The notes beneath the pieces are model-generated. The model was not told where the DNA came from. It worked only from the letters and a program-made list of their open reading frames with translations, and made no database searches. Shown here piece after piece: positions 8,975 through 56,973 of a stretch of 64,000 bases of DNA (position 1 is its first letter; every line of letters starts with the position of its first letter). Source of the DNA: Takakia lepidozioides. Lineage: Eukaryota; Plantae; Bryophyta. The position numbers and the translations under genes are program-made. The stretch is from the NCBI GenBank assembly GCA_030704615.1, contig CM060733.1, positions 24,676,001 through 24,740,000 of the forward strand, given 5' to 3'.

Positions 8975-10082
8975 TCAGCGGCATATATTGTTGTTGTCAT
9001 TTACAGGATAGAAGCTCTTTGTTGCCGCAGGGTGCAACATTCCTGCAGCACTCTTGGCGAGAATATCAACAAGCTGCCCCCTACAGATTCGAAGAGAAGA
9101 CAACACATGTTTCTCCAGGTATTTGTCGTCACCAACAATGCGAAGTTTGTTTGCAAATTCTTCGTCCATGGAGGATGGTACGAGGACAGGCTCCGCATCA
9201 TAGGGGAAGTCATTTGTGGAAGGGCTCTCTGTTGCATTTCCCAAACCCTCTTCGTCGCCGCCACTTGCATGAACCCTAAACACATTATGCAATCCTCCAT
9301 GAATGGTTCCTAGCGCCGTGCACTAGCGCGCTCTATGAGTCCATCCTACAAGTGTGGATGAAGCAACTTTAGGACTCGGACTTGATGCTTGCACAAATTG
9401 CCCCTCATTGCCCATGGGCAAGTGCAAGAAGCCCATTCGCATCTGGGGTTGTAAACAATGTAAATTGTGTTTGGGTGATTGGTGCTTAGAACATAGGTTG
9501 GTTGCCCAGGATGGAACGGCAGAATGACATTGCAAGCTAGGATGTCGCATGCCGCAAGCATAGAATTGGACATGTACTTCTCCTGTTTGTCATTCGTTAT
9601 GAATCCGTGCGTCTTCAGGTAAATTGCATACCAGTACACGTGTGTTAGCACACGGCCTGTGAGTTCCCATATGAGCCAATCCATTCTACGCCCAATCATT
9701 TTGCTTTTCCCCATCCTCACTCTTGCCTTCAAGTTTCCATGGTATGCCTCAATGCTAGCGTTTGTGTCTTGACTGGCATGCGGAACATGGCGAGTTGCTG
9801 TACACCACATTGCTATTTTAGGACGTCATTCTTTATCGATGTAGTCCAGAAATTCATGCCCATTCGGATATTTCTTTCTCATGCCTCGGAGCGTTATTGC
9901 TACCCACACAAGATCTTCTTTGGGATCGATTGGTCCACCTCTACAGTACATGAGGTCTCCCATATCCTTTAGCAAGTTTGCGGCAGTGATAGGATCTTTG
10001 ATTTTCGCGCATGATTGCTTCACCCAAGCCCGCCGGATATGCCAAAGGCACAGGAAAATGAGCACTCCTCGGAAAACAGCCC
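8975..10082 (-). pseudogene. Mutator-like (MULE) transposase, 3' exon with SWIM zinc finger
   Basis: LCLWHIRRAW (CxxH), DTNASIEAYHGNLK (catalytic E region) and CTCPWAMRGNLCKHQ (SWIM). Splice acceptor near 10083. Frameshifted; the upstream exon was not recognised. Confidence 0.85.
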
Positions 10083-10327: not shown

Positions 10328-11045
10328 TGTCGCGCACCTCACTTCGGTAAGCTCCCCTTCAAGTCATAGTTACTCGCTTTGATGTGCGCACCTAACTCCC
10401 AAACTGGCCAACTCGGAGCTTCGGCTGCTCCCCGGAACATAACGGTCCCCTTTTGCCCCTCCAAAAGACCCTCCACCAATTTGGGCCTAGTGGAAATTCC
10501 CTTTGGTAGATGGCAGTCGGGAATAGCTCCCCACTCCTTGGTCGCTTTTCGGCTCGCTCGCTCACTCACTAGTTTTTGGTCACCAACGGGCTTGCACCGT
10601 TCTCGGGGTTAGTACTCCCTATATATACTTCTGTGACTGTCCGCAGGGGTTTCACAAACAACCCTGCCATTTTATGGCGAACCACCACGGAGACCCTCGA
10701 TTCCCGGTGATGAGTCGCGGTGAGTCTTGGCCCACTCACCACGGCCCCATTGGACCGTGATGAGTCCCAAGACTCCCCACGACTCCCACCACAAGGTCTC
10801 CGCCCCCATGGTGAGTCATATGCCATCCCCACTAAGTCCCACTAAGCTACCACCACCCCTCGTGGAACCACCCCCACCGCAACCCGGTGTGCGGGGCTCC
10901 ACCTAGTGAGCGCCTCCACCTCCTTGACTGCCTTGGGCACTCAAGGGTGCTTCAGCCCCCGTACCTATTGTTGCCACTACCCCCACCATAGGGGCAGCCC
11001 CTCTTGTGTCCCGACCCCCTGCCCTCAAGGCAAAAGGCCGCGACA
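10328..11045 (-). repeat. 3' LTR of the Galadriel-like element
   Basis: tgtcgcgca...cgcgaca; about 95% identical by hand count to 24742-25467. PPT-like agtaggggtgtg on the minus strand at 11046-11057. Confidence 0.95.
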
Positions 11046-11948
11046 CACACCCCTACTAACAGGGAGTCGATGTCCTCATCGACTTGTCCATTTTGTAGAA
11101 ACGAACATCCAAGTTGTGGCGTCCCACATCAAGGAGTTTGTTTCCATACATGGCGTCCCATAGCAAAGAACCAAACTCCCACTTGACTCAACTCTCCACT
11201 AGCTAGTTCGGCCGACTTCCTCCAAGTCCCGGCCAAGGGTGGAGCCTCTCAAGCTCCACCTAGTGCACTCTTCTTGGCCGACTTCAAGGCCAAGGGTCGA
11301 TCCTTCCCGAGGATTGAATCGCCTTACTGCAACAACATTGCTTGCGACCGCTCATGATGCCAGTTTTGGCATCACCTTGAGCAAGGGTTCACCTTGAACC
11401 CTTTTTGACTAGGAAGATAACCTTGAACCAACCGTGCGTCCCAATCACTACAATTGGGTCCGCCTTGGAATGTTGGCCTGAGGTACGGGAACACGTCGAA
11501 GCCGCATTACGACTTCGTCTCGAGGCTACACGATTATAGTATGTGAACGGAAGCACGTAGCTTCCGCGTTAGCCCGCACTACAAGGCAACCCCCTCGGTA
11601 GCGTAGTTATAGTATGCGCACGCGCCAGGTGCGCACTAGCACGTGAACTCCTAAAGAAGGCGCAAGTTACCTTGAACCTTGGATGGGAGTCACCCGATTT
11701 TGGCACTACACAAACACACGATTAATCCAATTTGTCTCTCCCACTTTTGTAAGCTAGCATGCATTCTACACACTAGCCAACCATACCATGCATCACCATT
11801 CTAAACAAAATAGGCAGCACTATATTTGGAAACCATTTCATTTATAACAAAATTTGTACAACACAAGTTTTTGCAATCGGATTCCTGAGCTAGCTAAGTC
11901 GGGCTAAGCATGCATTTCCTCCCCCAGGTTCCAAGGTTGATGTCCCCA

Positions 11949-14770
11949 TCAACGCTTCTTCCGGTCGCCTTCGAAAGCTGTAACCGCCTCGGATGCGTTT
12001 CCCATTTCTGAGGCACGCACCCAAGTTGCCTCCACTTGACGATAGCCCTTCCATTTCACGAGATACTCCGTTTCTCGATTCTTGAACCTCCTTGACTTAA
12101 GCACTGCCTCCACCTCGTACTCATGTTCATTTTCATGATCCAACGGCACAGGTGGCGGACGCAACACTTGATGCCGATTCGGACGTGCTTCATCTTTGAA
12201 GTAAGGCTTCAAGGGAGACGTGGATACCGGATGCACCTTGCTGTTTGCCGGCAACTCCAATTCATACACATCCTCATTCATAACCTTCCGGATGCGAAAG
12301 GGTCTCGCATACGAGGTACGAACTTCGGACTCACTTCCGGAGGTAGTCGAAAATTCTTGATGTTCAACCAGACCTCCGTGCCTGCCTCAAACTTAATTTC
12401 CCTCCGTTTCCGATTTGCCTGCCGTTCATACCGTTTCCTAGCTTTGGCAATGTTGTACTTTGCGAGCTTCAACAAACGTTCACGTTCTTCCAGCACTACT
12501 GCTATTGCCAGTTCCTCAACGTCCTGGGCGGCCCAACTTGTTGGCACCAGAGGTGCTTTTCCATAGACCAATACGAAAGGGGAAACTCCCGTTGCGGAGT
12601 GATTTGTGTTATTATAACAGAACTTTGCCGCATCCAAGTGCTCCACCCAGTCCGATTGGTCTGCCGACACGTAATTCCGCAAAATCTGCTTCACCACGGA
12701 ATTCATCTTTTCCGTTTGGCCATCCGTCGTAGGTCGGAAGGCGGTGCTCATCTTGATCCTCGTCCCCATTTTCTTCCAAAGTGCCCTCCAAAATTTACTC
12801 GTAAACTTTGGATCGCGGTCCGAGACAATATCCTTCGAGAATCCATGATGCTTGAAGACGTGGGCGAAGTAAAGTCGCCCCGTCTCCTGCGCCGTTGCTG
12901 TCTCCTTGGTGGGGATGAAATGGCCCATTTTATTGAACCTATCCACCACCACCATGATTGCATCGAATCCTTTTGACAGCGGCATAGCAGTCATGAAATC
13001 CATCGAGACACTTTCCCAAGACCCCTCTGGAATCGGCAAGGGTTGTAACAGCCCCGCTTGTTTTTTGTACTTGTTCCGGTTTTGTTGGCATGTGGTGCAT
13101 GTCTTGACATACTCCTCAATCTCCTCCCTCAGTTTGGGCCAGAAATACTCTTTCTTCAGGAGCGCCGCGGTGCGCTTGGCTCCACTGTGGCCCGCAAGCG
13201 GGCCATCATGGCATTCTCTCAAGAGACTATCTCTGATCCCTCCCTTTGACACATAGAGACGCTTTTGCTTGTACCGGAGTAGTCCATTGTGCAAGTGGAA
13301 CTACGATTTAACCCCCATCCTCAAGTCCCCCATCACGGACTTCGTCATCTCATCCTTCCGGTAGGCCTTCCGGATCTTCCTTTGGAACGTCATCTCGCCT
13401 CTGTACACCAACATGAGCTGTTGCTTTCTACTTAAAGCATCGGCCACCACATTGTCCCGTCCCGGTTTATCCACGTCGAACAGAACCAAGGTGTCTTGCC
13501 ACCTAAGTTGTTTTGGGGACAACTTAGGCTGTGTGGTAAAATACGTCACCGTGACATTATCCGTGAACACCTTCACCAGGTTGGAACCAACATAGTGGCG
13601 CCAAAGCTCAAGGCAATGCACCACCGCCTTCATTTCTTTCTCGTGCGTAGGTCACCTTCGCTCCACTTCATTCAGTTTCTTACTTTCGTAAGCCAATGGA
13701 CGTCCATCCTGCATGAGCACACCCCCAATTGCGAAGTCCGACGCATCCGTATGAATCTCAAATGGACGGTCGAACTCCGGGATTTTTAGAACTGGAGCTT
13801 CTGCCATCCGCTGCTTCAACTCAACAAAAGCTTGGCCACAAAAGGTGTTCCACACCCAAACTTTGGACTTATATAGAAGGTCTGACAGCGGCCCCGCGAT
13901 CTTGGCGAAATTTCTCACATACTTTCGGTAATAGGAGGCAGTCCTAGGAAGGATCGCACTCCCGGAAACGAAGTCGGAGGTTCCCAATCCAAGATCGCCC
14001 TCACCTTTCTGTCATCCAATTTGATTCCATCCTGTGTAATCACATGCCCTAGGAATTCCACTTTTGTGACCCCGAATTTGCACTTTGAAGCTTTGGCATA
14101 TAGCTTCCCTTCCCGCAATTTCTGGAACACCCTTTTGAGATGCTCCAGGTGCTCTCCTTTTGTTTTCGAGTACACCAAGATGTCGTCGATGTACACGATT
14201 ACAAAGTCATCTAACCACTCCTGGAAAAGGCTGTTCATTAGCGTGCTAAAGGTTGCGGGTGCGTTGGTGAGCCCAAAAAGCATCACCAAGAACTTATATG
14301 AACCATATCTTGTCATGCACACGGTCTTCTCCTCATCTCCTTCCGCCACTCGGATTTGATGGTAGCCGGAGCGCAAATCGATCCGGCTGAAATACTTCGC
14401 TCCTGCCAACCGATCGAAGAGGTCGTCGATCCTTAACAAATGGTACCGGTTCTTGATAGTCATCTTATTTAGAGCCCTGTAATCGACACACATCCGCAGC
14501 GTCACATCCTTCTTGTCTACGAATAGCACTGGGGCTCCGTAAGGTGACTTACTCGGCCGGATGTACCTCTTTGACATTAGATCCTTGAGCTGAGCCTTCA
14601 GCTCGACCAACTCTCTGTGGCTCAACCGGTAGGGCGCCTTGGCAGGCGGCTCCTATCCCGGTATCACCTCAATCTTGTGGTCAACTCCTCTTCGCGGTGG
14701 CAAGCCGCTTGGTAAATCCTTCGGCATCACATCCTGGTATTTCTCCAAGATCCCCTTGATCCAATCCGGA
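11949..14770 (-). pseudogene. pol (RT-RNase H-integrase-chromodomain) of the Galadriel-like element, frameshifted
   Basis: RT: [17 protein letters not shown]: TDAS. INT: HHCC (HDGPLAGH..CTTC), SMDF / SDRD / DGQTE. Chromodomain: EYEVEAVL..EYLVKWKGY..EATW. Confidence 0.95.
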
Positions 14771-14772
14771 AC

Positions 14773-15236
14773 TAACGTATCGTTGTTGGTGGACACATGA
14801 GCGTCGCACTCCTTCATGACACCGGCAATGACACGAAAGCTGGGGCTCCCGATAAGTGATGTGGGGGCCTCTATTGAAGTCGTTCTGCCAAAGGAGAACC
14901 ACAACTGGCGACGGGTTGACATTCGATGTTCCTCTTCAGCTGAGGAGTTGGGAGGGACGTGAGAACTTCACCATTTGCGAGATCGATAGAGTGGATCTCA
15001 TTTTGGGGATGACATTTTTGAGCAAATCAGGAGCGATCATAGATGGCCGCAAGAGAGTAGTCACGCTACCGTGTGGGAATGGTGGTGAAGTTTTACGAGT
15101 TTCGGAAACGCCCAACCCAGTGGGAGAGCGAATAAACCTGCTGTCAACAAAGGAGTGGGCCGTGGAAGAGCCACACGAGCCCCAGTTTTTGCTTTACGTA
15201 AGATAAGTGGAAAGAGAAAACGATAGGGAGCCGAGC
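14773..15236 (+). pseudogene. Aspartic protease of the Galadriel-like element, locally inverted
   Basis: The + strand reads SLLVDT*ASHSFM...DLILGMTFL, whereas the flanking gag and pol are on -. Confidence 0.85.
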
Positions 15237-15239
15237 TTA

Positions 15240-15674
15240 TCCCACTCACGAACATTAACTGACTCCTTTTACGCAATGGGTCAGTCTCCTTATACAATTC
15301 ACAAGAGTAGTTGCCTACCTTGCAAGTCTTGGCAACCAGCGCTTCCACCAAGCGGCTGATGGAATCTTCGGACAGCTCCGTGGTTGCCCGAGTCATGTTC
15401 AATTGTCGGGGTTTCGCGCACTTCTTGGCCATGTGCCCAGGCTCCCCGCAATTAAAGCACACTCCATCGAAGGTCGCCTTCTGTCCGCCATAAGCCGTCG
15501 CACCTGATTTTCCTTTTGGAGCACCAGGTGCCGCCTTGATGTGTGAAGGCTCTCCCTTCAATTTCCATGTGCCATTGTCGACGCGTGGCCTATCCCACTT
15601 CTTTTCCGGTCGGAAGGAGTCACCCTCCCGCCGAGTCTTCTTGCGATTCAGCTCCGTACGACCTTGTCTTTCGC
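15240..15674 (-). pseudogene. gag C-terminus with CCHC zinc knuckle (Galadriel-like element)
   Basis: CFNCGEPGHMAKKC. Confidence 0.9.
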
Positions 15675-17097
15675 TGTTAGTCCATATTTTCCCTCCATTT
15701 TTGAATTGTATATGCTACATAATTATTTATTTATTTCACAAAACGAAGGGAATGGAAAACTGACATTTTTTATAATATGGAAAATGATCACAGATATTAT
15801 AGTTCTTCTTCCATCGCTTTCCTATTTCCTATGCTACTATTTATAACCTTTATGTAAATAAGCCTTCTTCATAGTTTCAGATCATAGTCTCTCATACTAC
15901 AACCCCTCATCTAGTCTCCTTCCTTGATTCCTATTCTAATCCATGTTCTTTAGTCATCTCTCCCCTTCGCCTCCTTGTCCTTTTTCATCCTTGTCCTTCA
16001 AGAGACAACGCTTTATTTCTTAGATACCAATGGTTCCTTCCTTCTCATTGGTCACTATAATTTTCTGTGCTAGCACCTTTTAATTTCCATGATTCCAATA
16101 ATTTCTTTGTTTTTCCTCCAAATTCACTCCTTGGAGATTTTAGGATCAATCCATGACACAACAAAAGTTTTTGGAATGTTTTAAATTATTCTCACACCTC
16201 ATATTCGCAAGTAAGTTCAAAGCTCATATCAATTGGTGTTAATACTCTCTATAGATCATGTCTTCCCATTAATTGCTTCTAAAAGTCATCTAAAAGGAGA
16301 TTTTAGCACAATGCTGTAAATTCACTTAACATTTTTGGCGATCATACCGATACAGTTAGTCCCTTAACGACGAACCCAGAATCCCTGGTTAGTGTGAGAG
16401 AGATAATAAGTGAAAATATTATCATATATACCCAAATAATCTCTTTGTAAAATAACTATGGAATTATAAATAAAATGATTCACTCATTATAAAGTCAAGG
16501 AGATCATTCTCGCTGTAAGAAAAACTTTGTTGGAACCCAAGATTTACAATCCAACCTTGGCAGTAATTTGCATTAACTTACAAGAACTTATGTCTTTTAA
16601 ATATTCCGCCCTTTATCTTTTGTGCATTATTTTTGGGCTGTGCAGAAAATACATTTGTACACGTTTATATTTTGTAAGTGATGACAGCAAAGTGTGTGAC
16701 CGTCCCTCATATGAGAGATCTTCCCATTTTAACTTTTAAAAGTGGTTGAGTGCAGTGAAGTGATCTAATCCGGAAAAGGTTATCCGGTCCCTTGTCCACC
16801 GGCTTATGCCAGGATGCATGCTTAGGTTTATTCTTCCAAAACAGATGAGTATCAAACAAATGCACCCAAATCTTTTTCCCATGATATACTGCGGTCCATT
16901 ATGGACTCTTGTGTATGCTTGTGTAGTACTTTATAGATATACATACCCTAATATAAGGTTATTGGGTTACAACGAATTATTTTAAGCCCGTGGAAAGTTA
17001 TCCAAGTGGTGCGTTAAGTGTAAATGCAAGAATGCTTGGATTGCTTGAAATAAATGCAATAAGGTATGAGCCATTTGCTCAATTTGTTTTTCCATCA
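15675..17097 (-). repeat. Probable full 3' LTR of the nested element
   Basis: Starts with TG at 15675. The first ~330 bp match 22651-22959. It ends ...catca directly beside the PPT. The extent beyond 16006 is inferred from the PPT only. Confidence 0.55.
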
Positions 17098-17302
17098 AAC
17101 CCCCTTCTCCCCAACTGGTCCCATTAATCTTTGGTGAATGTTAGGCTGATTGTGTGTGACAAAAATAAAATAAAGACCCCCCTTTTCTTTGATTAGAATT
17201 TGTTATTCTTCGCTTGAAATCATGATGTTAAGTGAAGCTTCTAAGAAATTGGAGTCTAAAAACCTTGGAAAGACGATTATGAACAGTCCGGATGGTTAAA
17301 CA

Positions 17303-20300
17303 TTACACATAATATTTTTTCACTTGTTCTCCAGCCGTCTTAGTTGGAAACAATATACCGTCACTATCCTTTAACTGTAAAGAACCGTTTTTAAAAGCCT
17401 CCTCTACTATGAAAGGACCAAACCATTTATGTGAAAATTTACCAGGAAACAGCTTTTGTCTGGGTTCGTTTATCATTACTAAGTCCCCTGGTTCCCACGA
17501 TACCGGTTTGAGACCCTTATCAAATCTGATTTTCCTTTGTTTTTGTTGGGTCTCTATATAATGTTGAGCGGTTGTCCGCCATTCATCCAACTGAGATAAC
17601 ATAAATAACCGTTCTTTCACCGAGTCATCTAGTGGTAAGTCATGGGCCATGGCGGTCCTAATGGTCTGGATTTCATGTTCTATAAGAAGTACACACTCTG
17701 TCCCATAGACCAATGCATATGGTGTGAAACCCATGACAGTTTTGATAGCAGTGTTATATGCCCAAACTGCCCCTCGTAATTTTAAGTCCCAGTCTCTTTT
17801 ATTGGTATCTACAGTTTTTCGTAAAATTTGAGCCAACGTTTTATTAGTGCTCTCGGCTAACCGATTAGCTTGTGGATGATAAGGCATACTTTTCCTATGT
17901 TTTATACTAAAGGTCTCTGTAAGATCGCTTATCACATCATTAAGAAAATGTGAACCTCTGTCCCAGACCAGTTCATATGGGGCTCCAAACCTGGTGATGA
18001 TATTATTAAATAAAAAATTAGTCGTGGTTTTGGCATCTTTCTTAACAACTATCCCCTAAGCCCACTTTGTAATATAGTCTATGGCTACCAGAATATAATT
18101 TTTTCTAGAACTTGAGGTAGGGTGAAATGGACCCATAAAAATCTATGCCCCATTTTTCAAATGGAAGCAAAGCTATGATTGGCACAAGCGGTCTAGTTTG
18201 ACTCTTAATAAAAAGGACCAGTGAACCGCTGACAAGTATCGCATTTCTGAACAGACTCAAATGAGTCTTTAAACATACTTGGCCACCAATACCCTGCTCT
18301 TAAAATCTTTTGGGCTGTAGTTAGTCCCACAAAGTGACCTCCGCAACAACTATCGTGACAGGCTTCTAAAATTACTGGAATTTCTTCGGAAATAACACAA
18401 TGCCTATACATCCCATCCACACCTTCTCGATACAATTTTCCAGCAATAATGCTGAATTTGACAGATTGTAAGTGTAGTTTTCGTCGCTCAAGTTTTGTAG
18501 ATCCTTCCGGGTACTTAAGTGTAGATAAAAAATTTGCCAGCTCTTTATACCATGAGGCTACTTCTCTCACATAAAATAAATTCATAAAAGATTCTATCCC
18601 AAACAAATCGACATCCGGAAATTCTTCTTCTGGGGGTACTAGTTCAAATGGTACACATGAAACCGCCCCACAATCAACCAAAGAATGAATTTTACTAGGT
18701 TTGTTAACTAGATCGTAATCAAATTCCTGCAAAAATATTATCCACTTCATAATTCTTATTGGAGGATTTAATTTGTTCATGAGGAGTTTAATTATTGGAT
18801 CATCAATATAAATTACAAATTTTCTACCAATCAAATAATGGCGAAAACGAGCTACTGAAAACACCAGAGCCAAACATTTCTTTTCGGAAGGAGTATAATT
18901 CTTTTCAGCAGTTATCAATGGTCTACTAGCATAAGCTATCGGATGATCCAACTCCACTCTCTGGGCTAAACAACTAGCCACCGAAACTTCAGTATCACTC
19001 ACATATATGTAAAATATTTTTCCAAAGTCTGGGGCTAGCATTATTGGAGCAGTTACTAATTTTTGTTTAATAGTTTGGAATGCTAATTGACAAAGAGGAT
19101 TTCCCTCCTTATCAACACTATTCCTTTCTTGGTCAAGTTGGTTAAAGGTAGCATTATTAATGCAAAATGATTTACGAACCTTCGAAAATAACCAGTTGAC
19201 CCATTAAATCTGCGTGTCTCTCTCACATTAGTTGGTGCTGGCATTTTCATTATTAACTCAATTTTTGTTGGATCTACCTGAAATCTTTTTTGGCTAATCA
19301 CGTGTCCTAGCAAAACTCCATACCTAGCCCCAAAAGAACACTTCATAGGATTGAGGGCTATGCTATACAGTCTACATTTTTCAAAACATTTTCTTAAAGC
19401 TTTAAGATGTTCCTTTTTAGTAGTGCAACAACATAAATCGTCAACAAAAATTCTTACAAAATCATTAAGATATTTTTGAAAAGCATTATTCATCATCCGT
19501 TGGTATGTCCCAGGAGCATTACACAAACCAAAGGGCATGACGTGGTAAGCAAAAGTACCCCAAATAGTGGAAAATGTTGTTTTTAATTTATCACTCTCCT
19601 CAATAGCTATTTGGTTGTACCCGGAAAAATAGTCCATAAAACTATAACATTCTTTCCCGGCCACTGAGTCTAAAATTTGATCAATAAAAGGTAATGGATA
19701 ATAATCTTTTTTGGTTACCTTATTTAAATATGAATAATCCACGAAAAACCTTAAACCCCTTGTTTTCTTCGGGACAACTACTACTGACGAGACCCATTCT
19801 GAATTATCTACTTCAAAAATCAAACCATTATCTCTTAGTTTCATCACCTCTTTTTGTAAGGCTTCTAAGCGCACAAGATTAACCCTCCTTTGGCGTTGCC
19901 GAATAGGCTTGGCTCGTGGCATTAAAGGAATTTTATGCGTCGCAATGTTTGGTGGTATTCCTTTTAAGTCCGTATATGACCAAGCAAAAATGTCTTTAAA
20001 TTCCTTACACAAAGCTGTGAACTCATTGACTTCATTAATTGCAAGTTCTTTACTTAGTCTGATTGGTTTACTCTCTCCTTCAGTACCTATATTTAGCTCA
20101 ATAACATTTGGTTTCAAACTTTTAGTTTGTACTTCCAGCTTGTCAGAGACTTCTTCTTTAGTACTCTCAAAACCATCGACTCCATCTAAAATCTCAAGTT
20201 CTTCTGAAAACAACACATCCAGAACTCCCTTGAACTCTTCTGGTAAAACCCTTTTTGTTTCATTATACATCAATTCTTCGTTGGAGCTATCATATTCATC

Positions 20301-20813
20301 TGATTCACTTGTAAAATATTCCAGCTCACTTAACTGGTTTGATTCAGAAGTAACTACGACGTAAGCCTCTCGAAGCCAAGGCCTTCCTAAAAGAAGTAAA
20401 TATCCGCAACGAGGATTATCTACTCTTAACACATGAAAGTGGGTTTTAGTGATTTGACCAGCCACCGATATTTCTACATTCGTTATGATACCTTCTGGTT
20501 TCATGGAAGTGTGATCAGCCATTCTCAATGAGTAAGGAGACGGTCCATGCAATTTCAACCCTAGTTCCTTCATGGCTACTAAAGTCATCACATTTACCCC
20601 CGACCCTGCATCAACCAAGGCTCCATATACTTCCAGTTCATTCACAATACAATTTACCTTAGGGCAATCTCTATCTATAATGGCTGAATCCAACGCTCTT
20701 ATGACCCTTACTGGTTTATGTTTTCTTACTAGATCCAATTTTAATTCTTTTTGAATAGCTGGACAAATAGTTATCAATTGGGATAACATGATATTGGCCT
20801 TATTTTCTGCCAA
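17303..20813 (-). pseudogene. pol (PR-RT-degenerate RH-INT) of the nested element
   Basis: PR: ALVDAGSGVN..LLLGRPWL. RT: LPFIDQILD, MPFGLCNAP, FVDD. RH: IAYASRPL..AEKNY. INT: HDSCCGGH..CDTC, WGIDF, DRGSHF, QAN.LAE. Several frameshifts. Confidence 0.95.
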
Positions 20814-20829
20814 GTCTTCTAATACACTA

Positions 20830-21834
20830 TAAGATTTTGCGTATTTCTTTATTGGAATTTCTTCTTCTTTCTTTTGAACTCTTGATTCTGGTCAGCAAAA
20901 GTGACAATCTTTGATCGATTGACTTTAGGAAGTTGTTCTTCTACAATATTCTTTTCTTTGACCAGATTATTTTTCTGATCTTGTTCATTAGGAGACTGTT
21001 TGGGTATACCAAAGTCATTAGTTTCTTCATTAGTTTCATCTTCATCCTTAGGGACAGGCTAGGGTTGTTTAACAGGGTTTTTGACTTTAGACCGAGTGCT
21101 TACTTCCCACACTTCCCGTGTGTTATTTCTTATTTTAGACCTAATCCTGTCCTTCGGTACAGATGAAGATTTTTCGACCATAATTAAATTCACACTTGGA
21201 GAAGAAGCACCCTTGTCCCGCGTTAAAACATTATTTGTTACGATTTGAACAGGAATATGTGGGTTAGGATGTGACCCTTCTTGGTTTCTATGATTTATAG
21301 GACCAGGTTGAGCTCTATTTCTTGTCACTTCATCCTTTTGTCCTCTACTACAAGGCTGACTGCACACACATGTAAATTTTTTTGAATGTGTTGTTCAGCA
21401 TCTTCGGTAACTAAACCATAAAATAGCGGTATATCCCTTACTATGTTAGGTGGTGCAGCTGTATTAGCTGGAATGACGATAGACAAACCTGCCGCGGCTT
21501 GTTGGACAGCCATGATAGGTGGTACAATATTAATTACACTAGGATTTGGGTTGGCTGGGACACTAACATTTGAGGTATTAATATTCAAATTAATAATGGC
21601 AGGCAAAAAGATTCTAGGAGATAGAGATTCTTGAGGTTGTTCCTCATCTTCTGGTGGTCCAAATGTTCTTAGGATCCTTCTTCATTCCCTTTCGGCTTCT
21701 TCTCGTGCTAACGCAAGCTGCCTAGATCTACTTCTTATTTCGACACGTAATTGTCTTGGCGTCAAATGTCTTGAACGAGCTTCATTAAGGAAATCAATTT
21801 TAGAATTTCCATAAGTGTTAGCTAAATCTGACAT
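20830..21834 (-). pseudogene. gag of the nested element, internally deleted
   Basis: ATG at 21834. IPLFYGLVTEDAEQHI resembles the gag capsid start; most of the capsid is missing after ~21330. Confidence 0.6.
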
Positions 21835-21917
21835 AAGTCATAATAAAATGTAGTATTATGGAATTGGTTTAAAGAGATTGCATTAGGCATGACGCTCAAT
21901 AATTCAGTGGTCTGGAT

Positions 21918-22367
21918 TCAATGTAACACTCTTTCTAACCCCACTCTAGTAGTCAAAGCTATGTTTGCTAATGAGTTTGCTAGGTGATTTTCCTCCCTTG
22001 GAATACATTTTATTGTGACAGAGTCAAATAATTTTAACAACTTCTGGACTTCTTCATTCAATTGACAAAGTTTCCTATCACAAATATTATACTCTCTAGT
22101 GATTTGACAGTAGACCAATTCAGAGTCTGTATTAATTTCAACACTAGAACTGCCATGAAGCTTCGTTTCCTCCAAACCCCTTATGAGAGCTTTATATTCT
22201 GCCACATTATTAGAAATTGGGAAACCAATATGCTCAGCTAATTGCTTATATATTAGACCGAACGGATCAATTAAAACCACACCAATTGCTGCATGGCTTG
22301 GATTATTACAAGCAGCCCTATCAACAAATAACTTCCATGAATGTGGGACTTCTTGCAACAAATTCAT
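21918..22367 (-). CDS. Archaeal-type RNase HI (aRH / RVT_3-like), stand-alone ORF inside the retrotransposon
   Basis: WKLFVDRA..NP..AAIGVVL...SNNVAEYKALIRGLE...VEINTDSELV..QI...Y......IPREENHLANSLAN. Catalytic D, E and D are present; the last D reads N. Confidence 0.9.
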   Translation of the reverse strand: MNLLQEVPHSWKLFVDRAACNNPSHAAIGVVLIDPFGLIYKQLAEHIGFPISNNVAEYKALIRGLEETKLHGSSSVEINTDSELVYCQITREYNICDRKLCQLNEEVQKLLKLFDSVTIKCIPREENHLANSLANIALTTRVGLERVLH

Positions 22368-22631
22368 AATTTAAATCTTTGGACAACAAAATTGTGTTGT
22401 TTAAGTGATTCCTTGTCATTGTGAAATCCGAAACTGCTATAGTATCTCTTAAATCCTTTAGAGCATTTATAGTCAGCTTCAGAATACATATCACATTTAA
22501 TAAATAAAATAGATATATTTTGAGTTTCCATTATTATTATTATTATTTTCACTCGAGCAATATAACCTTGATCCTTTTCAGCTAGATCAGAGAAAGCTTT
22601 AAACTCAACTAACGAGAGCAGACAAAGTCTG

Positions 22632-22649
22632 CTCCTGGCAGACGCACCA
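22632..22649 (-). promoter_or_regulatory. Primer-binding site complementary to the tRNA-Gly(UCC) 3' end
   Basis: ctcctggcagacgcacca versus the plant tRNA-Gly(UCC) end CTCCCGGCAGACGCACCA (recalled sequence), one mismatch; 1 nt from the LTR. Confidence 0.75.
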
Positions 22650-22650
22650 A

Positions 22651-22959
22651 TGTTTGTCCATATTTTTCCTCCATTTCTGAATTGTATATGCTACATAATT
22701 ATTTATTTATTTCACAAAACAAGGGAATAGAAAACTGACTTATAATATGGAAAATGATCACAGATATTATAGTTCTTCTTCCATCGCTTTCCTATTTCTT
22801 ATGCTACTATTTTTTTTTTAAATGTAAATAAGCCTTCTTCATAGTTTCAGATCATAGTCTCTCATACTACCACCCCTTATCTAGTCTCTTTCCTTGATTA
22901 CTATTCTGATCCATGTTCTTTAGTTATCTCTCCCTTCACCTCCTTGTCCTTCAAGAGAC
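22651..22959 (-). repeat. Truncated 5' LTR of the nested element
   Basis: Matches 15675-16006; homology stops abruptly at caagagac. Confidence 0.85.
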
Positions 22960-23211
22960 GATTATTTGTGTTTGTTGAAGTGACGAACATTTCCGCCATA
23001 GTGCGGAAGAAGTGCATTGGCCACATTAAACGGTTGATGTGATACCATTTCACAAATATATCACATCGCATTTGCTAATGTATCACATGAACCGTTTCAT
23101 GTTGCCTGCGGAAGTCTTCGATTAGTACGACATCCGGACTAGGGGGAGGTATGATTGGACATCATTTTAGAAGCGCTTCAAGTGATGAACGAAATAATTC
23201 ATCATTGAGCA

Positions 23212-23640
23212 TAGCCCTCAAATAGGTGGGAGCCACTTTCACCCGATCTTCGTCACTCAATTTGGCCACCCGGAAGTACTGCTCTAGCTCCAAGAGCCAA
23301 GTGTTGAGTGCCTTCCGATTTCGGATGCCCTCGAAGTTGCCGGGTCCGTTAGGCTTCACCTTAAACTTTGCCTTAGTGGAAGTGACATTAGTCGCCTTCA
23401 ACACGTTTTTCAACGTCCCGCCAAACTGCGCCAACAACCCTTCCCAAAAGGCTGCTGGCAAGGGAAGCATCTGTTGGTCTGCCGGAGCTCCCGAGACCCC
23501 GAGAGGTCATCGGGCTCCGACTCCCCAGATTCCTCCCGTTCTTGAGCGGCCTCTCTTTCAAAAGCATGAATCGCCTCCTCAAACTGCCGCTTCGGTGAGA
23601 GGAATGTTTGGCCGCGTGAGGGTGTGAGCACGTGAGCGCA
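23212..23640 (-). pseudogene. gag N-terminus of the Galadriel-like element
   Basis: KPNGPGNFEGIRNRKALNTWLLELEQYFRVAKLSDEDRVKVAPTYL is a typical chromovirus gag segment. Confidence 0.85.
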
Positions 23641-24727
23641 GTCAGACTCACGTCACGTCAGCAATTCTTGCCACGTTGGTTCACGGGTGTTACGACACGT
23701 CAGCAGTCCACGCCATCGACAATCACTCCTGCTCTGTTTTTTTGTTTTTTTGTTTTTTTTTCCGTAATTAAAAAAAAAACAAAAAAACAAAAAAACAGAG
23801 TAGAAGTGATTGTCGGTGCCGATCATCAGAAGTGATTGTCACAATCACTTCTGCTCTTTTTTTTTTTTTTTTTTTTTGGAACAATACGGAGAAGAAAAAA
23901 TAAAATAAAATAAAAAACGGAGCTGTTTTTTTTTTTTCTTTGGGAACAATACGCAGAAAAAAAAAAACAGAGCAGAGCAGAAGTGATTATCGGCACCGAT
24001 CATCACTTCTGTTTTTTTTTTTTTTTTTTTTTTTTTTTTTCCCGTATTCTCCCCTTAAAAAAAAACGGAATCAGAAGTGATGATCGGTGCCGACAATCAC
24101 TTATGTTTTTTTTTATTTTCCGTATTGTTCCTTAAATTGTTTTTTGCTTTTGTGTCGCTATGTACTGTAGGCTTCTTTTTGATACCGTAATCCTTCTTCT
24201 CTTCGTTATTTTGGGAGGAAGCGGGGTCTTCCTGGGTTACCCTCAATGGAGCCTTATGAGGTTATTTTGTCCTCATTGTAATTGTTATTGTAAAACTTAC
24301 TATTGTAATTGCAGAATGTTGTGGAATGGATGCCACAGTTTTAGGCATATGTTCTATTTCGGGTATTTTGATGGTATTCTTGATGGTATGTTGGTTTCAT
24401 GTTCCCTAAATTCATCCCACGGTCATAGGACTCCGGGTATAGGCGCCGCATGTTTCGGTTGACGTTGCGGATGCTGACATGGCGCCACGTCAATATTCGA
24501 CACCATGGCAACCTACTGGCATCACGCTCACACCACGTCACCAGTGTGTGTGCGTACGCTTACACGCTCACGCGCGAGGCTCATGCGGTTGCATCGTTGC
24601 TTCGGTGACACATCGCTCCCAGCGGGCTCACCAGGATCATCATCTTTCGAGCCGTTCCGCTTTCGCTTTGGCTTGCCCGACCCCATGATGAGGCCGATCC
24701 CAAGGACGATCGCGTACTGAACTCTAA

Positions 24728-24739
24728 GCTCTGATACCA
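24728..24739 (-). promoter_or_regulatory. Primer-binding site for initiator tRNA-Met
   Basis: TGGTATCAGAGC on the minus strand, 2 nt inside the 5' LTR boundary. Confidence 0.95.
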
Positions 24740-24741
24740 AG

Positions 24742-25467
24742 TGTCGCGCACTCACTTCGGTAAGCTCCCCTTCAAGTCATAGTTACTCGCTTTGATGCGC
24801 GCGCCTAACTCCCAAACTGGCCGCCGGGCCAACTCGGAGCTTCGGCTGTTCCCTGGGACATAACGGTCCCCTTTTGCCCCTCCAAAAGACCCTCCACCAA
24901 TTTGGGCCTAGTGGAAATTCCCTTTGGTAGATGGCAGTCCGGAATAGCTCCCCACTCCTTGGTCGCTTTCCGGCTCGCTCGCTCACTCACTAGTTTTTGG
25001 TCACCAACGGGCGTACACCGTTCTCGGGATTACTACTCCCTATATATACTTCTGTAACTGTCCGCGGGGGTTTCACAAACAACCCTGTCATTTTATGGCG
25101 AACCACCACGAAGACCCTCGATTTCCGATGATGAGTAGCGGTGAGTCGTGGCCCACTCATCACGGCCCCATTGGACCGTGATGAGTCCCAAGACTCCCCA
25201 CAACTCCCACCACAAGGTCTCTGCCCCCATGGTGAGTCCTATGCCAACCCCCACTAAGTCCCACTAAGCTACCACCACCCCTCGTGGAACCACCCCCACC
25301 GTAACCCGGTGTGCGGGGCTCCACCTAATGAGCGCCTCCACCTCCTTGAGTGCCTTGGGCACTCAAGGGTGCTTCAGCCCCCGTATCTATTGTTGCCACT
25401 GCCCCCACCATAGGGGCATCGCATCTTGTGTCTCGACCCCCTGCCCTCAAGGCAAAAGGGCGCGACA
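24742..25467 (-). repeat. 5' LTR of the Galadriel-like element
   Basis: TG...CA, homologous to 10328-11045, followed by TSD GACTT. Confidence 0.95.
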
Positions 25468-27239
25468 GACTTGGCCAGAGGGCATTCCGAGCGGACTAGG
25501 TTGCCAGCAGACTTCCGAACAGCCCCCTCCGACAGACTCGCCTGCCAGCGGATTTGCTAGACTAGACTGACCTCGCAGCAGACTGGCGCACGTGAGTCTT
25601 GCAGCAAACTGCTTGCGAACAATCCTCTCCGGTGGACTGGCCTGCCAGCGGACTTGCCCTTAGGAGACCGGCATCAGACTTACCCAGACTTTGCTGGCAG
25701 CACACCCGAGCAGACTGACCTTGCAGCATACTTGTGCAAGTGAGTCTTCCAGCGCCAGAGACATTATCAGCGGACTAGTTTGCTAGCATACTTGCAAAAA
25801 GGAATGGGCCGGAAGTCTTGCAGCCAGGACTGCGTTGTATGGCAGGGGACTTGCCAAAGAGACAGATAATGGACGGGTGGGGGGAGCCGGGTGTCCGTGC
25901 GGGGGGCCCACCGATCAGCTCGCGCGTGCGCCATAACGTCCCAATTATTGTAAAATGAGAGGCTTCTATCGCAAGATGGTCGAGCTTCTTCATTTTTTTT
26001 TATACCTATGTGTGAGCGGACTTTTATGAAATGTTTGGATTAGCGCAATGAAGTCACCTGTTGATGGTTTGGATGAGATGGTTGATAGGGTGGTGACTGC
26101 ATGAGGAAGGGTTAGCAATGTGATTACGTAAGAGAAATAAGGAGGTAAAGGTGTCAGTGAAAATGTAATGTATATGTGATAAGGAATGAAGTTGGGTGAT
26201 TGCTTCGTGTATGGCCATAAGTTCACCACGAAGTATGGTAGGAGGGACAAATAGTCTATGGAATTTGTCTTGGTTTGTGGCAACATGATATACCCCATAA
26301 CCAGCTTTAGAGCCTTGTCGTACACCTAAGCATCATGCCACAATATACATTGTTGTCCAACTACACTTCCTAGCATACAATCCTAGAAAGCTATGCCACA
26401 ATTGTCCCCTTAGCTGGTGATTAGGTCCCTCTAACACCGGATAACTGACAAGTATCAATTCCAATTGGATCATCGTTTGGTCTTCAACCTCATAGGTCAT
26501 AGTTTTCAAAGTCTTATATAGATCAAGAGACCGGGTGTAAAGAAAACCCCATCGTTAGTTATCTTCCTACAATCCATGATCATCAGTTGAGTAACCACGT
26601 CGTTGAACTCCCATTAGCTAGGCCTTGGGTTCTTGTTGGCCTCACCATGGTCATGCCCACTATCTTTGTCCAAGGCATCATGGACACAACCATTGTTCAA
26701 CATGAACCTCCTCAAAATGATAGTATCAAACATCCCATGCATCATCCCCTTGAGCATTTATCATATACCAAAATGATTGCGGCACCACTAGCATGCAATG
26801 CAACCCTACAGATATCATTGCAAGATTGTGATCTATCCTCATGTGAAATGTGATATGGTGCACAATCGCGTATATGGTCATTCCAAAATTCATACCATGT
26901 CATTTCGACCTTCCAAAATCAACACTCTTGAATGTAACACCTCATTGACTATTAGAATCACACGTCTTGTCTTGCTATGACATCCAAGGTGTAGTGTCAC
27001 AAGGTCGTAGGTACTGTCTGCTGCAAATAAACGTAATCCCCAAGGTGGAATCGTCGAACCCCTAGGTTATATCCACCTCAGACGAACGGTCGTACCTCGA
27101 TATATCATTGTGTTACGCTATGGCGAGGTTCTCAAAAGCCATGCCATGACTCTCTTAAACAACTCCGCTTTCTGCTCACACATCTGAGTCATCAAGGTTG
27201 AGGATTAATGCAGCTTCCTTACCAAAAACATAATGTCTC

Positions 27240-55248: not shown

Positions 55249-56973
55249 ATGGAAGTGGAAGTGACTGTCCTATCAAAAAGCATGGTGGTTCCCACGCCAC
55301 GTCCTCACGAGAGCCGGGAGTTGCAGCAGCTCCCACTTACCAGCCTCGATCTCCGCTTCGACCTCCGCATGACAACATTTTCTCCCCTCAGGTGGGTGCT
55401 CCTGTTTGATGCAAGCGCTGAAGAAGACCTCATTGTGGAGCAGTTCAATGAAAGACTGAGGGAGAGTCTCTCAATAGCGCTGGCAGACTACTACCCATTT
55501 GCAGGTAAATCATCCACCCTTCAGTAGTACCAATGCCATAGCGGCTACAGTACTATTTATGTGATTATCAAAGTCTGTCATGCCAGCTTTGGTATATATA
55601 AGCTTCGTGGAAACTGGATAACGACGTTGGGAGACCATGACATGTCATGCAGGGCGGTTTGTACAAGAATTCGGGCAGACAGCTGTGGACTGTAATGACG
55701 CAGGGGTGGAGTTTGTTGAGGCTTCAGCTCCCATCAGTGTGCGTGAGCTAAGTAATTACAACATGGCTGACATGTATCAACACTTTGCCCAACCAATCCC
55801 CTTCAATCCCAGGGACGAGGGGCATACCCGCGGCCCTCTTTTCGGTGCCCAGGTCAGCTTCCTTTATCTGTGTCATTAAATGGCTCTATTTCAGGTGTGA
55901 AGGTGATGAGCACATTCCATGTGCAATTGTAGCTTAGTACTTTTTGGAGTGCAAATGTGACACAATTGGAGTTTCAGAGTGATGTCAATTCTCTTTGAAA
56001 TATGCAGATCACTCATCTCAAGTGTGGCGGCTATGTAGTTGGTTATGTCTACTTCCATGCAGTCGCAGATGGAATGACGCTGTGGCAATTTCTCAAGTCA
56101 TGGGCAGAGGTCGCACGTGGGGAATGCATCTCCCTTCTTCCCAATTTTAGCTCACGAGCAAATGTAGTCAAATTGGCGTCAGAGTCAGACAACTCAGATT
56201 GGAAAGAAATTGCCCTTCCAAAAATTTGTATTAAGAGATTACCGTTGTTGGGTAATCGTTGTGTCGAGCATTCAAAGGGTCCTCATGCGACTGCCCTGGA
56301 CTCTACAACTTTGCACATTCTTTTTGATCTACTGATGCAAAAGAAGCTCAAAGACAAAGCATTGGAGGATTCACCAGATGGGCCTCCGTTCAGTTCTTAT
56401 GTAATGATCAGTGCACATGTCTGGAGGGCCATTATCCGGGCTCAATTGCTTGCAGATACGGAGGAAACTCGCTTCTTCAGTACCATCAATTGCAGGAAAC
56501 GGTGGCCAGAGCTCCCTCAGAATTATTTCGGAAATGCAATTCTCGACGCAGTGGCAGTCACCACCGTGAGAAAGCTTTTGGGAAATAAAATCTCATATGC
56601 TGCAAACCTGCTGCACAAGACCATTGCAGATTGCACTGCACAACACATCAAGTCTTATTTTACCATGACGGAGAAAGGAAAAAAGGAATGGATCATTGTC
56701 CAAGATTCCCGACCTTTTACCGATGTCATTACAGGTGGTTCAACTCGATTCCCAAGTCTTGAGCAATGTGACTTTGGATCGGGCCCGGCTTTTGCTAATA
56801 TTGCTCTGTTACCCAAGGGAATTCCTTGTTCTAGGATCGGTTTCATACCAAAGCATAGTGATGAAACAATAGAAATAAACTTCAAACTGCCTCATGATGT
56901 TGCGAAGAGACTGCAGAAAGATCCAGACTTCATATCTTGTGTATCATCTGTCACCGCTGCTACACACGGATAG
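55249..56973 (+). CDS. BAHD acyltransferase, 3 exons (55249-55504, 55653-55852, 56008-56973), ~473 aa
   Basis: SLSIALADYYPFAGR, DCNDAGVEFVEA, Q|ITHLKCGG, HAVADG (HxxxD), NYFGNA, DFGSG. GT-AG junctions are in frame. Confidence 0.93.

What the first reader, a model, noticed from the sequence alone, without database searches (positions are those of the whole stretch)
21918..22367. Archaeal-type RNase H encoded as a separate ORF upstream of gag in a Ty3/gypsy element
Seen: a 149-aa ORF with clear RNase HI motifs (FVD, SNNVAEY, TDSELV, IPREEN..A..LAN) lies inside the element, between the PBS (22632-22649) and the gag ATG (21834). It is on the element's coding strand and has its own stop, and pol contains no aRH. 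Known: Tat/Ogre/Retand elements carry an extra aRH, but to my knowledge always within the pol polyprotein. Inference: this may be an undescribed architecture in which RNase H is made as a free protein from the 5' leader, either an independent capture or an intermediate in Tat evolution.
Basis: partly seen in the sequence, partly recalled or inferred. Interest (0 to 1): 0.85.

Follow-up and report, generated by a model that had tools for sequence, protein, structure and literature searches.

The report
Known Tat retrotransposon with RNase H before gag
The stand-alone RNase H gene in front of gag is real, but this layout was already published in 2023 for moss and clubmoss Tat retrotransposons, and the copy here is an old, broken member of that kind.

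Summary
Window 21918-22367 (minus strand) is a 149-aa ORF with an archaeal-type RNase HI fold: Pfam RVT_3 E=2.4e-21, and a predicted structure matching Halobacterium RNase H1 at TM 0.85/0.95. It lies inside a 7.3-kb Ty3/gypsy element (LTRs 15675-16007 and 22651-22960), between the PBS (22631-22649) and the gag ATG (21834). It has its own start and stop. Pol carries only the native RH.

The claim of an undescribed architecture fails. [quoted passage not shown] Prokopeva et al. 2026 call this layout "pre-capsid".

This copy is decayed. Its LTRs are about 92% identical, gag has an internal deletion and a stop, and pol has three frameshifts and two stops. The aRH has Asn at the fourth catalytic Asp (D in 59/59 relatives) and Arg at an invariant Gly.

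Three things are new here, all modest:
- The RT is sister to Adiantum elements that carry aRH as a separate ORF after integrase.
- The aRH does not group with theirs (AU p=0.0004).
- A leader frame, open from the LTR across the PBS, stops on the aRH start (ATGA).

No RNA evidence was found. The scan noted the same layout elsewhere in this genome (s1-461275, unchecked).

The parts
22651..22960 (-). 5' LTR (310 bp) of the aRH-bearing element
   Evidence: Direct repeat with 15675-16007, about 91.6% identical; ends in ...ACA
22631..22649 (-). Primer binding site-like stretch (TGG...), one base after the LTR
   Evidence: Read directly; unique in the window, none expected by chance. The matching tRNA was not identified.
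22364..22690 (-). Leader frame open from inside the LTR across the PBS; first ATG at 22531; its TGA stop overlaps the aRH ATG (ATGA)
   Evidence: All 94 leader codons are open; 2 of 5000 mononucleotide shuffles are as open. A contig from another copy spans 22320-22591 without gaps. No Pfam hit.
21918..22367 (-). aRH: free-standing 149-aa archaeal-type RNase HI ORF. D16, E57 and D81 are kept; N131 replaces the fourth catalytic Asp; R17 replaces an invariant Gly.
21835..21917 (-). Spacer between the aRH stop and the gag ATG. Reading through the aRH stop ends after 31 codons and is not in the gag frame.
   Evidence: Three-frame translation
20814..21834 (-). gag remnant: ATG at 21834, one in-frame stop, a capsid N-terminal motif, an internal deletion at about 21340/21341, then a frame change
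   Evidence: Homology to the Adiantum gag stops at 21340. Contigs of other copies run on unlike on both sides of 21341. No Pfam hit on the pieces.
19083..20813 (-). Protease and reverse transcriptase ORF (576 aa)
   Evidence: Pfam RVT_1 3e-22 and weak aspartyl protease hits; 42% identical to an Adiantum pol
18205..19041 (-). Native RNase H (gRH) plus integrase zinc domain, in a different frame from RT
   Evidence: Pfam RT_RNaseH 6e-24 and Integrase_H2C2 7e-12. In alignment A3 the E, third D and fourth D columns are kept; the first D column holds Ser, with Asp one residue later.
17303..18139 (-). Integrase core, broken by frame changes and two in-frame stops
16008..17302 (-). 1.3-kb 3' region without a recognisable ORF or aRH remnant; purine-rich stretch just before the 3' LTR
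15675..16007 (-). 3' LTR (333 bp)
10391..25470 (-). Outer LTR retrotransposon (LTRs about 10391-11048 and 24812-25470) whose gag is split by the insertion of the aRH element
   Evidence: Direct repeats D1/D2; outer gag, RT and INT ORFs

Best explanation
This is an old, defective copy of a Tat-type Ty3/gypsy LTR retrotransposon with the published 'structure #4' or 'pre-capsid' layout: LTR, PBS, aRH ORF, gag, PR-RT-native RH-INT, LTR.

Shown:
- The ORF encodes an archaeal-type RNase HI fold.
- It is a separate cistron inside the LTR pair, 5' of gag.
- At least one other copy shares the leader-aRH junction.
- This copy is dead: gag is deleted, pol is frameshifted, and the aRH has Asn at the fourth catalytic Asp and Arg at an invariant Gly.

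Inferred: in working family members the aRH is translated from the 5' end of the genomic RNA as a free protein of about 17 kDa. It would supply RNase H activity in trans to a Pol whose own RH is partly degenerate. That activity covers template RNA removal and primer processing during reverse transcription.

The overlap between the stop of a long open leader frame and the aRH start (ATGA) suggests translation by termination-reinitiation. This last step is the weakest; I put it at about 0.2.
For: - ORF, domain and fold.
- Element boundaries and order.
- No aRH elsewhere in the element or window.
[quoted passage not shown] The moss LTRs are 256-356 bp, compared with 310-333 bp here (naming).
- The RT is sister (SH-aLRT 96) to Adiantum elements that also carry a separate aRH ORF.
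- Other copies: contigs 85-99% alike tile the whole 6 kb in two DNA runs. One contig (4 differences, no gaps) bridges the leader and the aRH start.
- Scan note s1-461275 reports the same layout on another piece. I did not check it.
- Decay of this copy.
- Leader frame and ATGA overlap. A parallel pol-stop/aRH-ATG overlap (TGATG) occurs in the uninterrupted Adiantum nelumboides element.
Against: - No curated Tat or Athila reference RTs could be included, and the RT backbone is unresolved. Tat membership therefore rests on the aRH, the layout and the aRH-bearing sister clade.
- The native RH keeps three of four carboxylates in register, whereas the 2023 paper reports degraded native RH in all aRH-bearing Tat.
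- There is no transcript evidence: two putative RNA runs of the species laid nothing.
- There are five upstream ATGs before the aRH start, and reinitiation after a long ORF is normally inefficient in eukaryotes (general knowledge).
- The second Adiantum copy lacks the overlapping ATG.
- Selection on the ORF could not be measured, because no other copy's sequence could be fetched.
Confidence: 0.85

Rival explanations
1. Independent capture. The RNase H of this family was acquired separately, from a host, LINE or prokaryote-like RNase HI gene, into the leader of a Tat-like element. It does not descend from the aRH shared by other Tat elements.
For: The aRH is 40-47% identical to prokaryotic RNase HI but only 24-36% identical to 13 Tat aRHs. 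Those 13, including the aRHs of its RT-sisters in Adiantum, form a 100/99 clade without it. The AU test rejects grouping it with the Adiantum aRHs (p=0.0004), although the RTs are sisters.
Against: In the same tree all LTR-element aRHs, this one included, lie on one side of a branch (support 84/39; 86% of bootstrap trees), so one origin is not excluded. The prokaryotic rows were picked as this ORF's best hits, which biases the identity comparison. No moss Tat B or Selaginella Tat C aRH, host RNase H or LINE aRH was available. I named the AU group after seeing a quick tree. The 2023 paper finds the aRH tree unresolved and prefers a single acquisition followed by recombination.
Confidence: 0.2
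2. The aRH is not a free protein. It is joined to Gag or Gag-Pol by splicing, readthrough or frameshifting.
For: There is no direct evidence. Splicing is known in some Tat/Ogre elements (general knowledge), and no RNA data exist here to exclude it.
Against: An in-frame stop lies two codons before the ATG. The ORF has its own stop. Readthrough ends after 31 codons and is out of frame with gag. The published description is a separate ORF.
Confidence: 0.07
3. A one-off event. An unrelated RNase H fragment, for example from a LINE, landed in the leader of this single copy.
For: Only one copy lies in the window, and no target-site duplication was found for the element.
Against: A contig that differs from the window at 4 of 272 positions bridges the leader and the aRH start. 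Contigs less than 99% alike cover the whole ORF. The ORF begins and ends cleanly at the domain borders. The same layout is published for five species, and another scan note reports it in this genome.
Confidence: 0.03

Closest known systems
Tat LTR retrotransposons, structure #4 / 'pre-capsid' (clusters Tat B in mosses and Tat C in Selaginella tamariscina; representatives Cpur_2, Scan_2, Cplu_2, Psch_2, Stam_3; Biryukov & Ustyantsev 2023, Prokopeva et al. 2026)
   Same: [quoted passage not shown] The LTRs are short (310-333 bp here; 256-356 bp in the moss representatives). Copy number appears low and copies are often old.
   Different: The host is not identified, so it may or may not be one of the five published species. 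The native RH here keeps three carboxylates in register, whereas the paper reports degradation. No sequence-level comparison was possible.
Tat structure #3 / 'post-integrase' (separate aRH ORF 3' of pol; conifers, Cycas, Ginkgo), together with the Adiantum elements found here (L083, L085)
   Same: The aRH is a free-standing ORF next to an LTR rather than a Pol domain. The Adiantum elements are the closest RT, RH and INT relatives in the databases searched (42-53% identity).
   Different: The ORF sits on the other side of the LTR, after integrase. Their aRH belongs to the main Tat aRH clade, and the window's does not group with it.
Tat structures #1 and #2 (Ogre/Retand-like 'retroviral' dual RH; 'copia-like' aRH before RT)
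   Same: An archaeal-type aRH is added to a Ty3/gypsy element that retains a native RH next to RT.
   Different: In those structures the aRH is a domain of the Pol polyprotein and the native RH has lost its catalytic residues. Here the aRH is a separate cistron.
Archaeal-type (type 1) RNase HI: Halobacterium salinarum RNase H1 (4e19), LC11-RNase H1 (3u3g/4h8k), M. tuberculosis Rv2228c N-domain (3hst), Sulfolobus tokodaii RNase HI (2ehg)
   Same: The fold and size match (TM 0.77-0.86 by query). The DED part of the tetrad and the R..N..A motif are present, and the identity to prokaryotic homologues is 40-47%.
   Different: It is encoded inside a plant retrotransposon. This copy has Asn at the fourth Asp and Arg at the Gly next to the first Asp.

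Membership tests
Tat lineage, structure #4 ('pre-capsid') | aRH encoded as a separate ORF between the 5' LTR/PBS and gag, on the coding strand | tested here: met
   LTR 22651-22960, PBS 22631-22649, aRH 22367-21918, gag ATG 21834
Tat lineage, structure #4 ('pre-capsid') | The extra RNase H is of the archaeal type, distinct from the native Ty3/gypsy RH | tested here: met
   Pfam RVT_3 2.4e-21. Best solved matches are Halobacterium, LC11, Rv2228c and Sulfolobus RNase HI. The native RH is a separate RT_RNaseH hit in pol.
Tat lineage, structure #4 ('pre-capsid') | RT falls inside the monophyletic Tat clade (sister to Athila) | tested here: inconclusive
   The RT is sister (SH-aLRT 96) to aRH-bearing Adiantum elements. 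However, the backbone is unresolved and no curated Tat or Athila references could be used.
Tat lineage, structure #4 ('pre-capsid') | Native RH catalytic core degraded (reported for all aRH-bearing Tat) | tested here: inconclusive
   The first Asp column holds Ser, with Asp one residue later. The E, third D and fourth D columns are kept. The core is better preserved than in pol-embedded-aRH Tat or in the Adiantum sister. This rests on a single decayed copy.
Tat lineage, structure #4 ('pre-capsid') | No aRH inside pol or after integrase | tested here: met
   tblastn with the window's aRH and the fern aRHs finds only 21918-22367. Pfam on the pol pieces agrees.
RNase HI (type 1, archaeal-type) | RNase H fold | tested here: met
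   Model pLDDT 92.6; match to 4e19 at TM 0.85/0.95, rmsd 0.8 A
RNase HI (type 1, archaeal-type) | DEDD catalytic tetrad | tested here: not met
   D16, E57 and D81 are present. Position 131 is Asn where 59/59 relatives have Asp. This holds for this copy only; the state in other copies is unknown.
RNase HI (type 1, archaeal-type) | Cleaves the RNA strand of RNA/DNA hybrids | not testable with these tools
   Needs an enzyme assay

The most novel reading that the evidence does not exclude
The pre-capsid aRH is not the same acquisition as the pol-embedded or post-integrase Tat aRH. It would be a second, prokaryote-like RNase HI capture, or a very early-branching one moved by recombination. It would be expressed as a free protein by termination-reinitiation after a leader ORF that starts in the LTR and reads across the PBS. 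That would answer the question the 2023 paper leaves open, namely how a separate-ORF aRH is made and used.
Probability: 0.12. Interest if true: 0.5.

Novelty: already known. Interest (0 to 1): 0.22.

Why it matters
As an architecture it adds nothing new. It is one more, decayed, example of a rare Tat layout that is already in the literature.

It still has some value:
- It is an LTR-bounded example. The aRH clearly lies inside the LTR pair and after the PBS. That matters because pre-gag and post-integrase positions can be confused when LTRs are not defined.
- It gives three testable leads on an open question: how a retrotransposon can use an RNase H that is not part of Pol.

The three leads are:
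- A stop-start overlap with a long open leader frame.
- A sister lineage in ferns with the free ORF on the other side of the LTR.
- Disagreement between the RT and aRH histories.

Tried and rejected
- **Close copies of the aRH in the 5.8-billion protein collection.** None found; the best hits were prokaryotic RNase HI at 40-46% identity.
- **Metagenome contig scan with the aRH.** It returned 80 loci, all prokaryotic-type RNase HI at 37-47% identity.
- **Viral contig scan with PR-RT.** Nothing.
- **Contexts of six more distant RT relatives** (L001, L002, L084, L086-L088). None holds an aRH.
- **Post-integrase aRH remnant in the window's element.** None.
- **Target-site duplication.** The flanks ATAAT and GCGAA do not match.
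- **Host identification.** There are no Rfam or tRNA hits in the window. The BAHD acyltransferase ORF at 56002-56973 found only one unnamed 71% hit. The organism stays coded.
- **Expression.** Two putative RNA runs of the species laid no contig. This is no proof of silence.
- **Scan notes by sequence.** Blank twice, which means nothing according to the operators.
- **dN/dS and catalytic residues across copies.** Not possible, because no other copy's sequence could be fetched and the reads table was cut before the aRH region.
- **Splice-site scanning for an aRH-gag fusion.** Considered and dropped as uninformative without RNA.
- **Complex prediction.** Not run, because I do not claim a specific binding pair.
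- **PBS.** The matching tRNA was not identified.

Full report
**Observation.** The minus-strand ORF at 21918-22367 is real: 149 aa, from ATG to TGA. It matches Pfam RVT_3 (E=2.4e-21) and RNase_H (E=2.3e-7). By sequence it matches solved archaeal-type RNase HI chains: Halobacterium 4e19 at E=3e-14, then LC11 3u3g/4h8k, Rv2228c 3hst and Sulfolobus 2ehg/3aly. An AlphaFold model built on a 60-row alignment has pLDDT 92.6. Foldseek returns the same proteins at the top, with 4e19 at TM 0.85/0.95 and rmsd 0.8 A. "Archaeal-type RNase H" is therefore correct.

**The element.**
- Direct repeats define a minus-strand LTR retrotransposon. The 5' LTR is 22651-22960 and the 3' LTR is 15675-16007, about 91.6% identical.
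- A TGG... primer-binding stretch at 22631-22649 starts one base after the LTR.
- The order on the coding strand is: LTR, PBS, a 284-nt leader, aRH (22367-21918), an 84-nt spacer, the gag ATG at 21834, PR-RT (20813-19083), native RH plus integrase zinc domain (19041-18205), integrase core (about 18139-17303), 1.3 kb with nothing recognisable, then the LTR.
- The aRH has an in-frame stop two codons before its ATG. Reading through its own stop ends after 31 codons, out of frame with gag.
- No other aRH exists in the element or the window.
- The whole element is inserted into the gag of a larger LTR element, whose LTRs are about 10391-11048 and 24812-25470.
- I found no target-site duplication.

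**State of this copy.** It is old and defective.
- LTR divergence is about 8%.
- gag has an in-frame stop and a frame change. Its similarity to the closest gag (Adiantum) ends at 21340, and contigs from other copies run on with unlike sequence on both sides of 21341. This copy has therefore lost part of the capsid region.
- Pol changes frame three times and has two in-frame stops in integrase.
- In the aRH, D16, E57 and D81 are kept. Position 131 is Asn where 59 of 59 aligned relatives have the fourth catalytic Asp. Position 17 is Arg where 58 of 58 have Gly.
- From memory, E. coli RNase HI D134N keeps part of its activity. Such mutants were crystallised (1kvc appears). I did not check the activity claim.
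- With about 7-8 disruptions in about 4.5 kb of other coding sequence, an unbroken 450-nt ORF is expected almost half the time. Its intactness says little about selection.

**Is it a family feature?** Two DNA runs of one sample of the same (coded) organism tile the whole 6 kb with contigs 85-99% alike. One 272-nt contig, with 4 differences and no gaps, bridges the leader and the first 47 nt of the aRH. At least one other copy therefore has the same junction. A first-stage note from another piece of this genome reports an archaeal-type RNase H between PBS and gag (s1-461275). I could not check it. Two putative RNA runs laid nothing, which does not show silence.

**Literature.** The layout is published.
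- Their Table S2 gives 5-12 such elements per moss genome.
[quoted passage not shown] The LTRs here are 310-333 bp.
- Prokopeva et al. 2026 (PMC13468544) call the layout "pre-capsid" and also credit Wang et al. 2021.
[quoted passage not shown] That question is still open.

**Relatives found here.**
- The PR-RT ORF has no close match. The best is an Adiantum nelumboides protein (42% over 92%), followed by Marchantia, Riccia and many unnamed contigs. Legume Tat/Ogre-type proteins with aRH in pol also appear.
- In an RT tree of 101 rows, the window's RT is sister (SH-aLRT 96) to two Adiantum elements. The backbone is unresolved, and I had no curated Tat or Athila references.
- Both Adiantum loci are LTR-bounded elements with gag, then pol, then a separate aRH ORF right after integrase. 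The A. nelumboides element has LTRs 98.9% identical and uninterrupted gag and pol ORFs.
- A second element in the same locus has the retrovirus-like order RT-gRH-aRH-INT.
- Six more distant relatives have no aRH at all.

**aRH history.**
- The window's aRH is 40-47% identical to prokaryotic RNase HI but only 24-36% identical to 13 Tat aRHs.
- In a careful tree of 34 rows, those 13 Tat aRHs, the Adiantum ones included, form a 100/99 clade on a long stem. The window's aRH sits at the junction with the prokaryotic rows.
- All LTR-element aRHs still lie on one side of a branch (84/39; 86% of bootstrap trees), so a single origin is not excluded.
- Holding the window's aRH together with the aRHs of its RT-sisters is rejected (AU p=0.0004).
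- Caveats: the prokaryotic rows were chosen as this ORF's best hits, no moss Tat B aRH or host or LINE RNase H was available, branches are long, and I had seen a quick tree before naming the group.
- The result agrees with the published remark that the aRH tree does not follow RT, INT and native RH. It fits recombination or a separate capture, and I cannot tell which.

**Native RH.** Against intact Ty3/gypsy RHs, the window's native RH keeps the Glu and the third and fourth Asp columns. The first Asp column holds Ser, with an Asp one residue later. Legume and JGI Tat proteins with aRH in pol, and the Adiantum sister, have lost the first and third Asp. Read from one decayed copy, this is only a hint that degradation of the native RH may be less advanced in this family.

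**Expression.** Five ATGs precede the aRH start. One leader frame is open for all 94 codons from the PBS to the aRH, and for 14 more codons into the LTR. Its first ATG is at 22531, and it ends in a TGA that overlaps the aRH ATG (ATGA). Only 2 of 5000 shuffles are as open. In the A. nelumboides element the pol stop and the first ATG of the aRH frame overlap as TGATG. The older A. capillus-veneris copy has no ATG there. These overlaps suggest translational coupling by termination-reinitiation. The evidence is thin and mixed, and I give it about 0.2.

**Verdict.**
- The interpretation as an undescribed architecture is not supported.
- The element is a decayed member of the known Tat structure #4 / pre-capsid kind.
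- Interest is low. The residual value is a cleanly LTR-bounded example and three small leads.
- The host could not be named. I therefore cannot say whether the family is one already catalogued.
- I built no consensus and mended no frame.

Noticed in passing
L083:6962-15844 (Adiantum nelumboides, GCA_022343405.2) and L085:5342-15700 (A. capillus-veneris, GCA_014529385.2): These fern Tat-like elements carry the aRH as a separate ORF directly after integrase (L083 13678-14370; L085 12817-13500). The 2023 survey lists only the retrovirus-like structure #1 for ferns. In L083 the pol stop and the aRH-frame ATG overlap (TGATG).
   Followed up: partly
L083:21902-25051: A second Adiantum element in the same locus has the retrovirus-like order RT, native RH, aRH, integrase. 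Two Tat layouts therefore lie within 26 kb.
   Followed up: partly
window 22364-22690 (minus strand): A leader frame is open from the end of the LTR across the PBS to a stop that overlaps the aRH ATG (2/5000 shuffles as open). Other scan notes report ORFs that start in the LTR and read through the PBS in other Gypsy families of this genome (s1-479741, s1-477129, s1-468025).
   Followed up: partly
window 10391-25470: An outer LTR retrotransposon (LTRs about 660 bp, 93-95% identical; RT at 13915-14625, integrase at 12278-13294, zinc-knuckle gag at 15061-15561 and 23162-23470) is split in gag by the aRH element.
   Followed up: partly
window 56002-56973 (+): A BAHD-type acyltransferase ORF (Pfam Transferase, 1.9e-33), probably a host gene or part of one. 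Its only close database hit is an unnamed 71%-identical fragment, so the host's proteome seems absent from the collection.
   Followed up: partly
window 9346-9810 (minus strand): A 154-aa ORF with a SWIM zinc-finger hit, possibly a remnant of a MULE-type transposase.
   Followed up: no
window 18640-19041 (minus strand): The native RH of the aRH-bearing element keeps three of four catalytic carboxylates in register. This is more than the pol-embedded-aRH Tat proteins and the Adiantum sister retain.
   Followed up: partly
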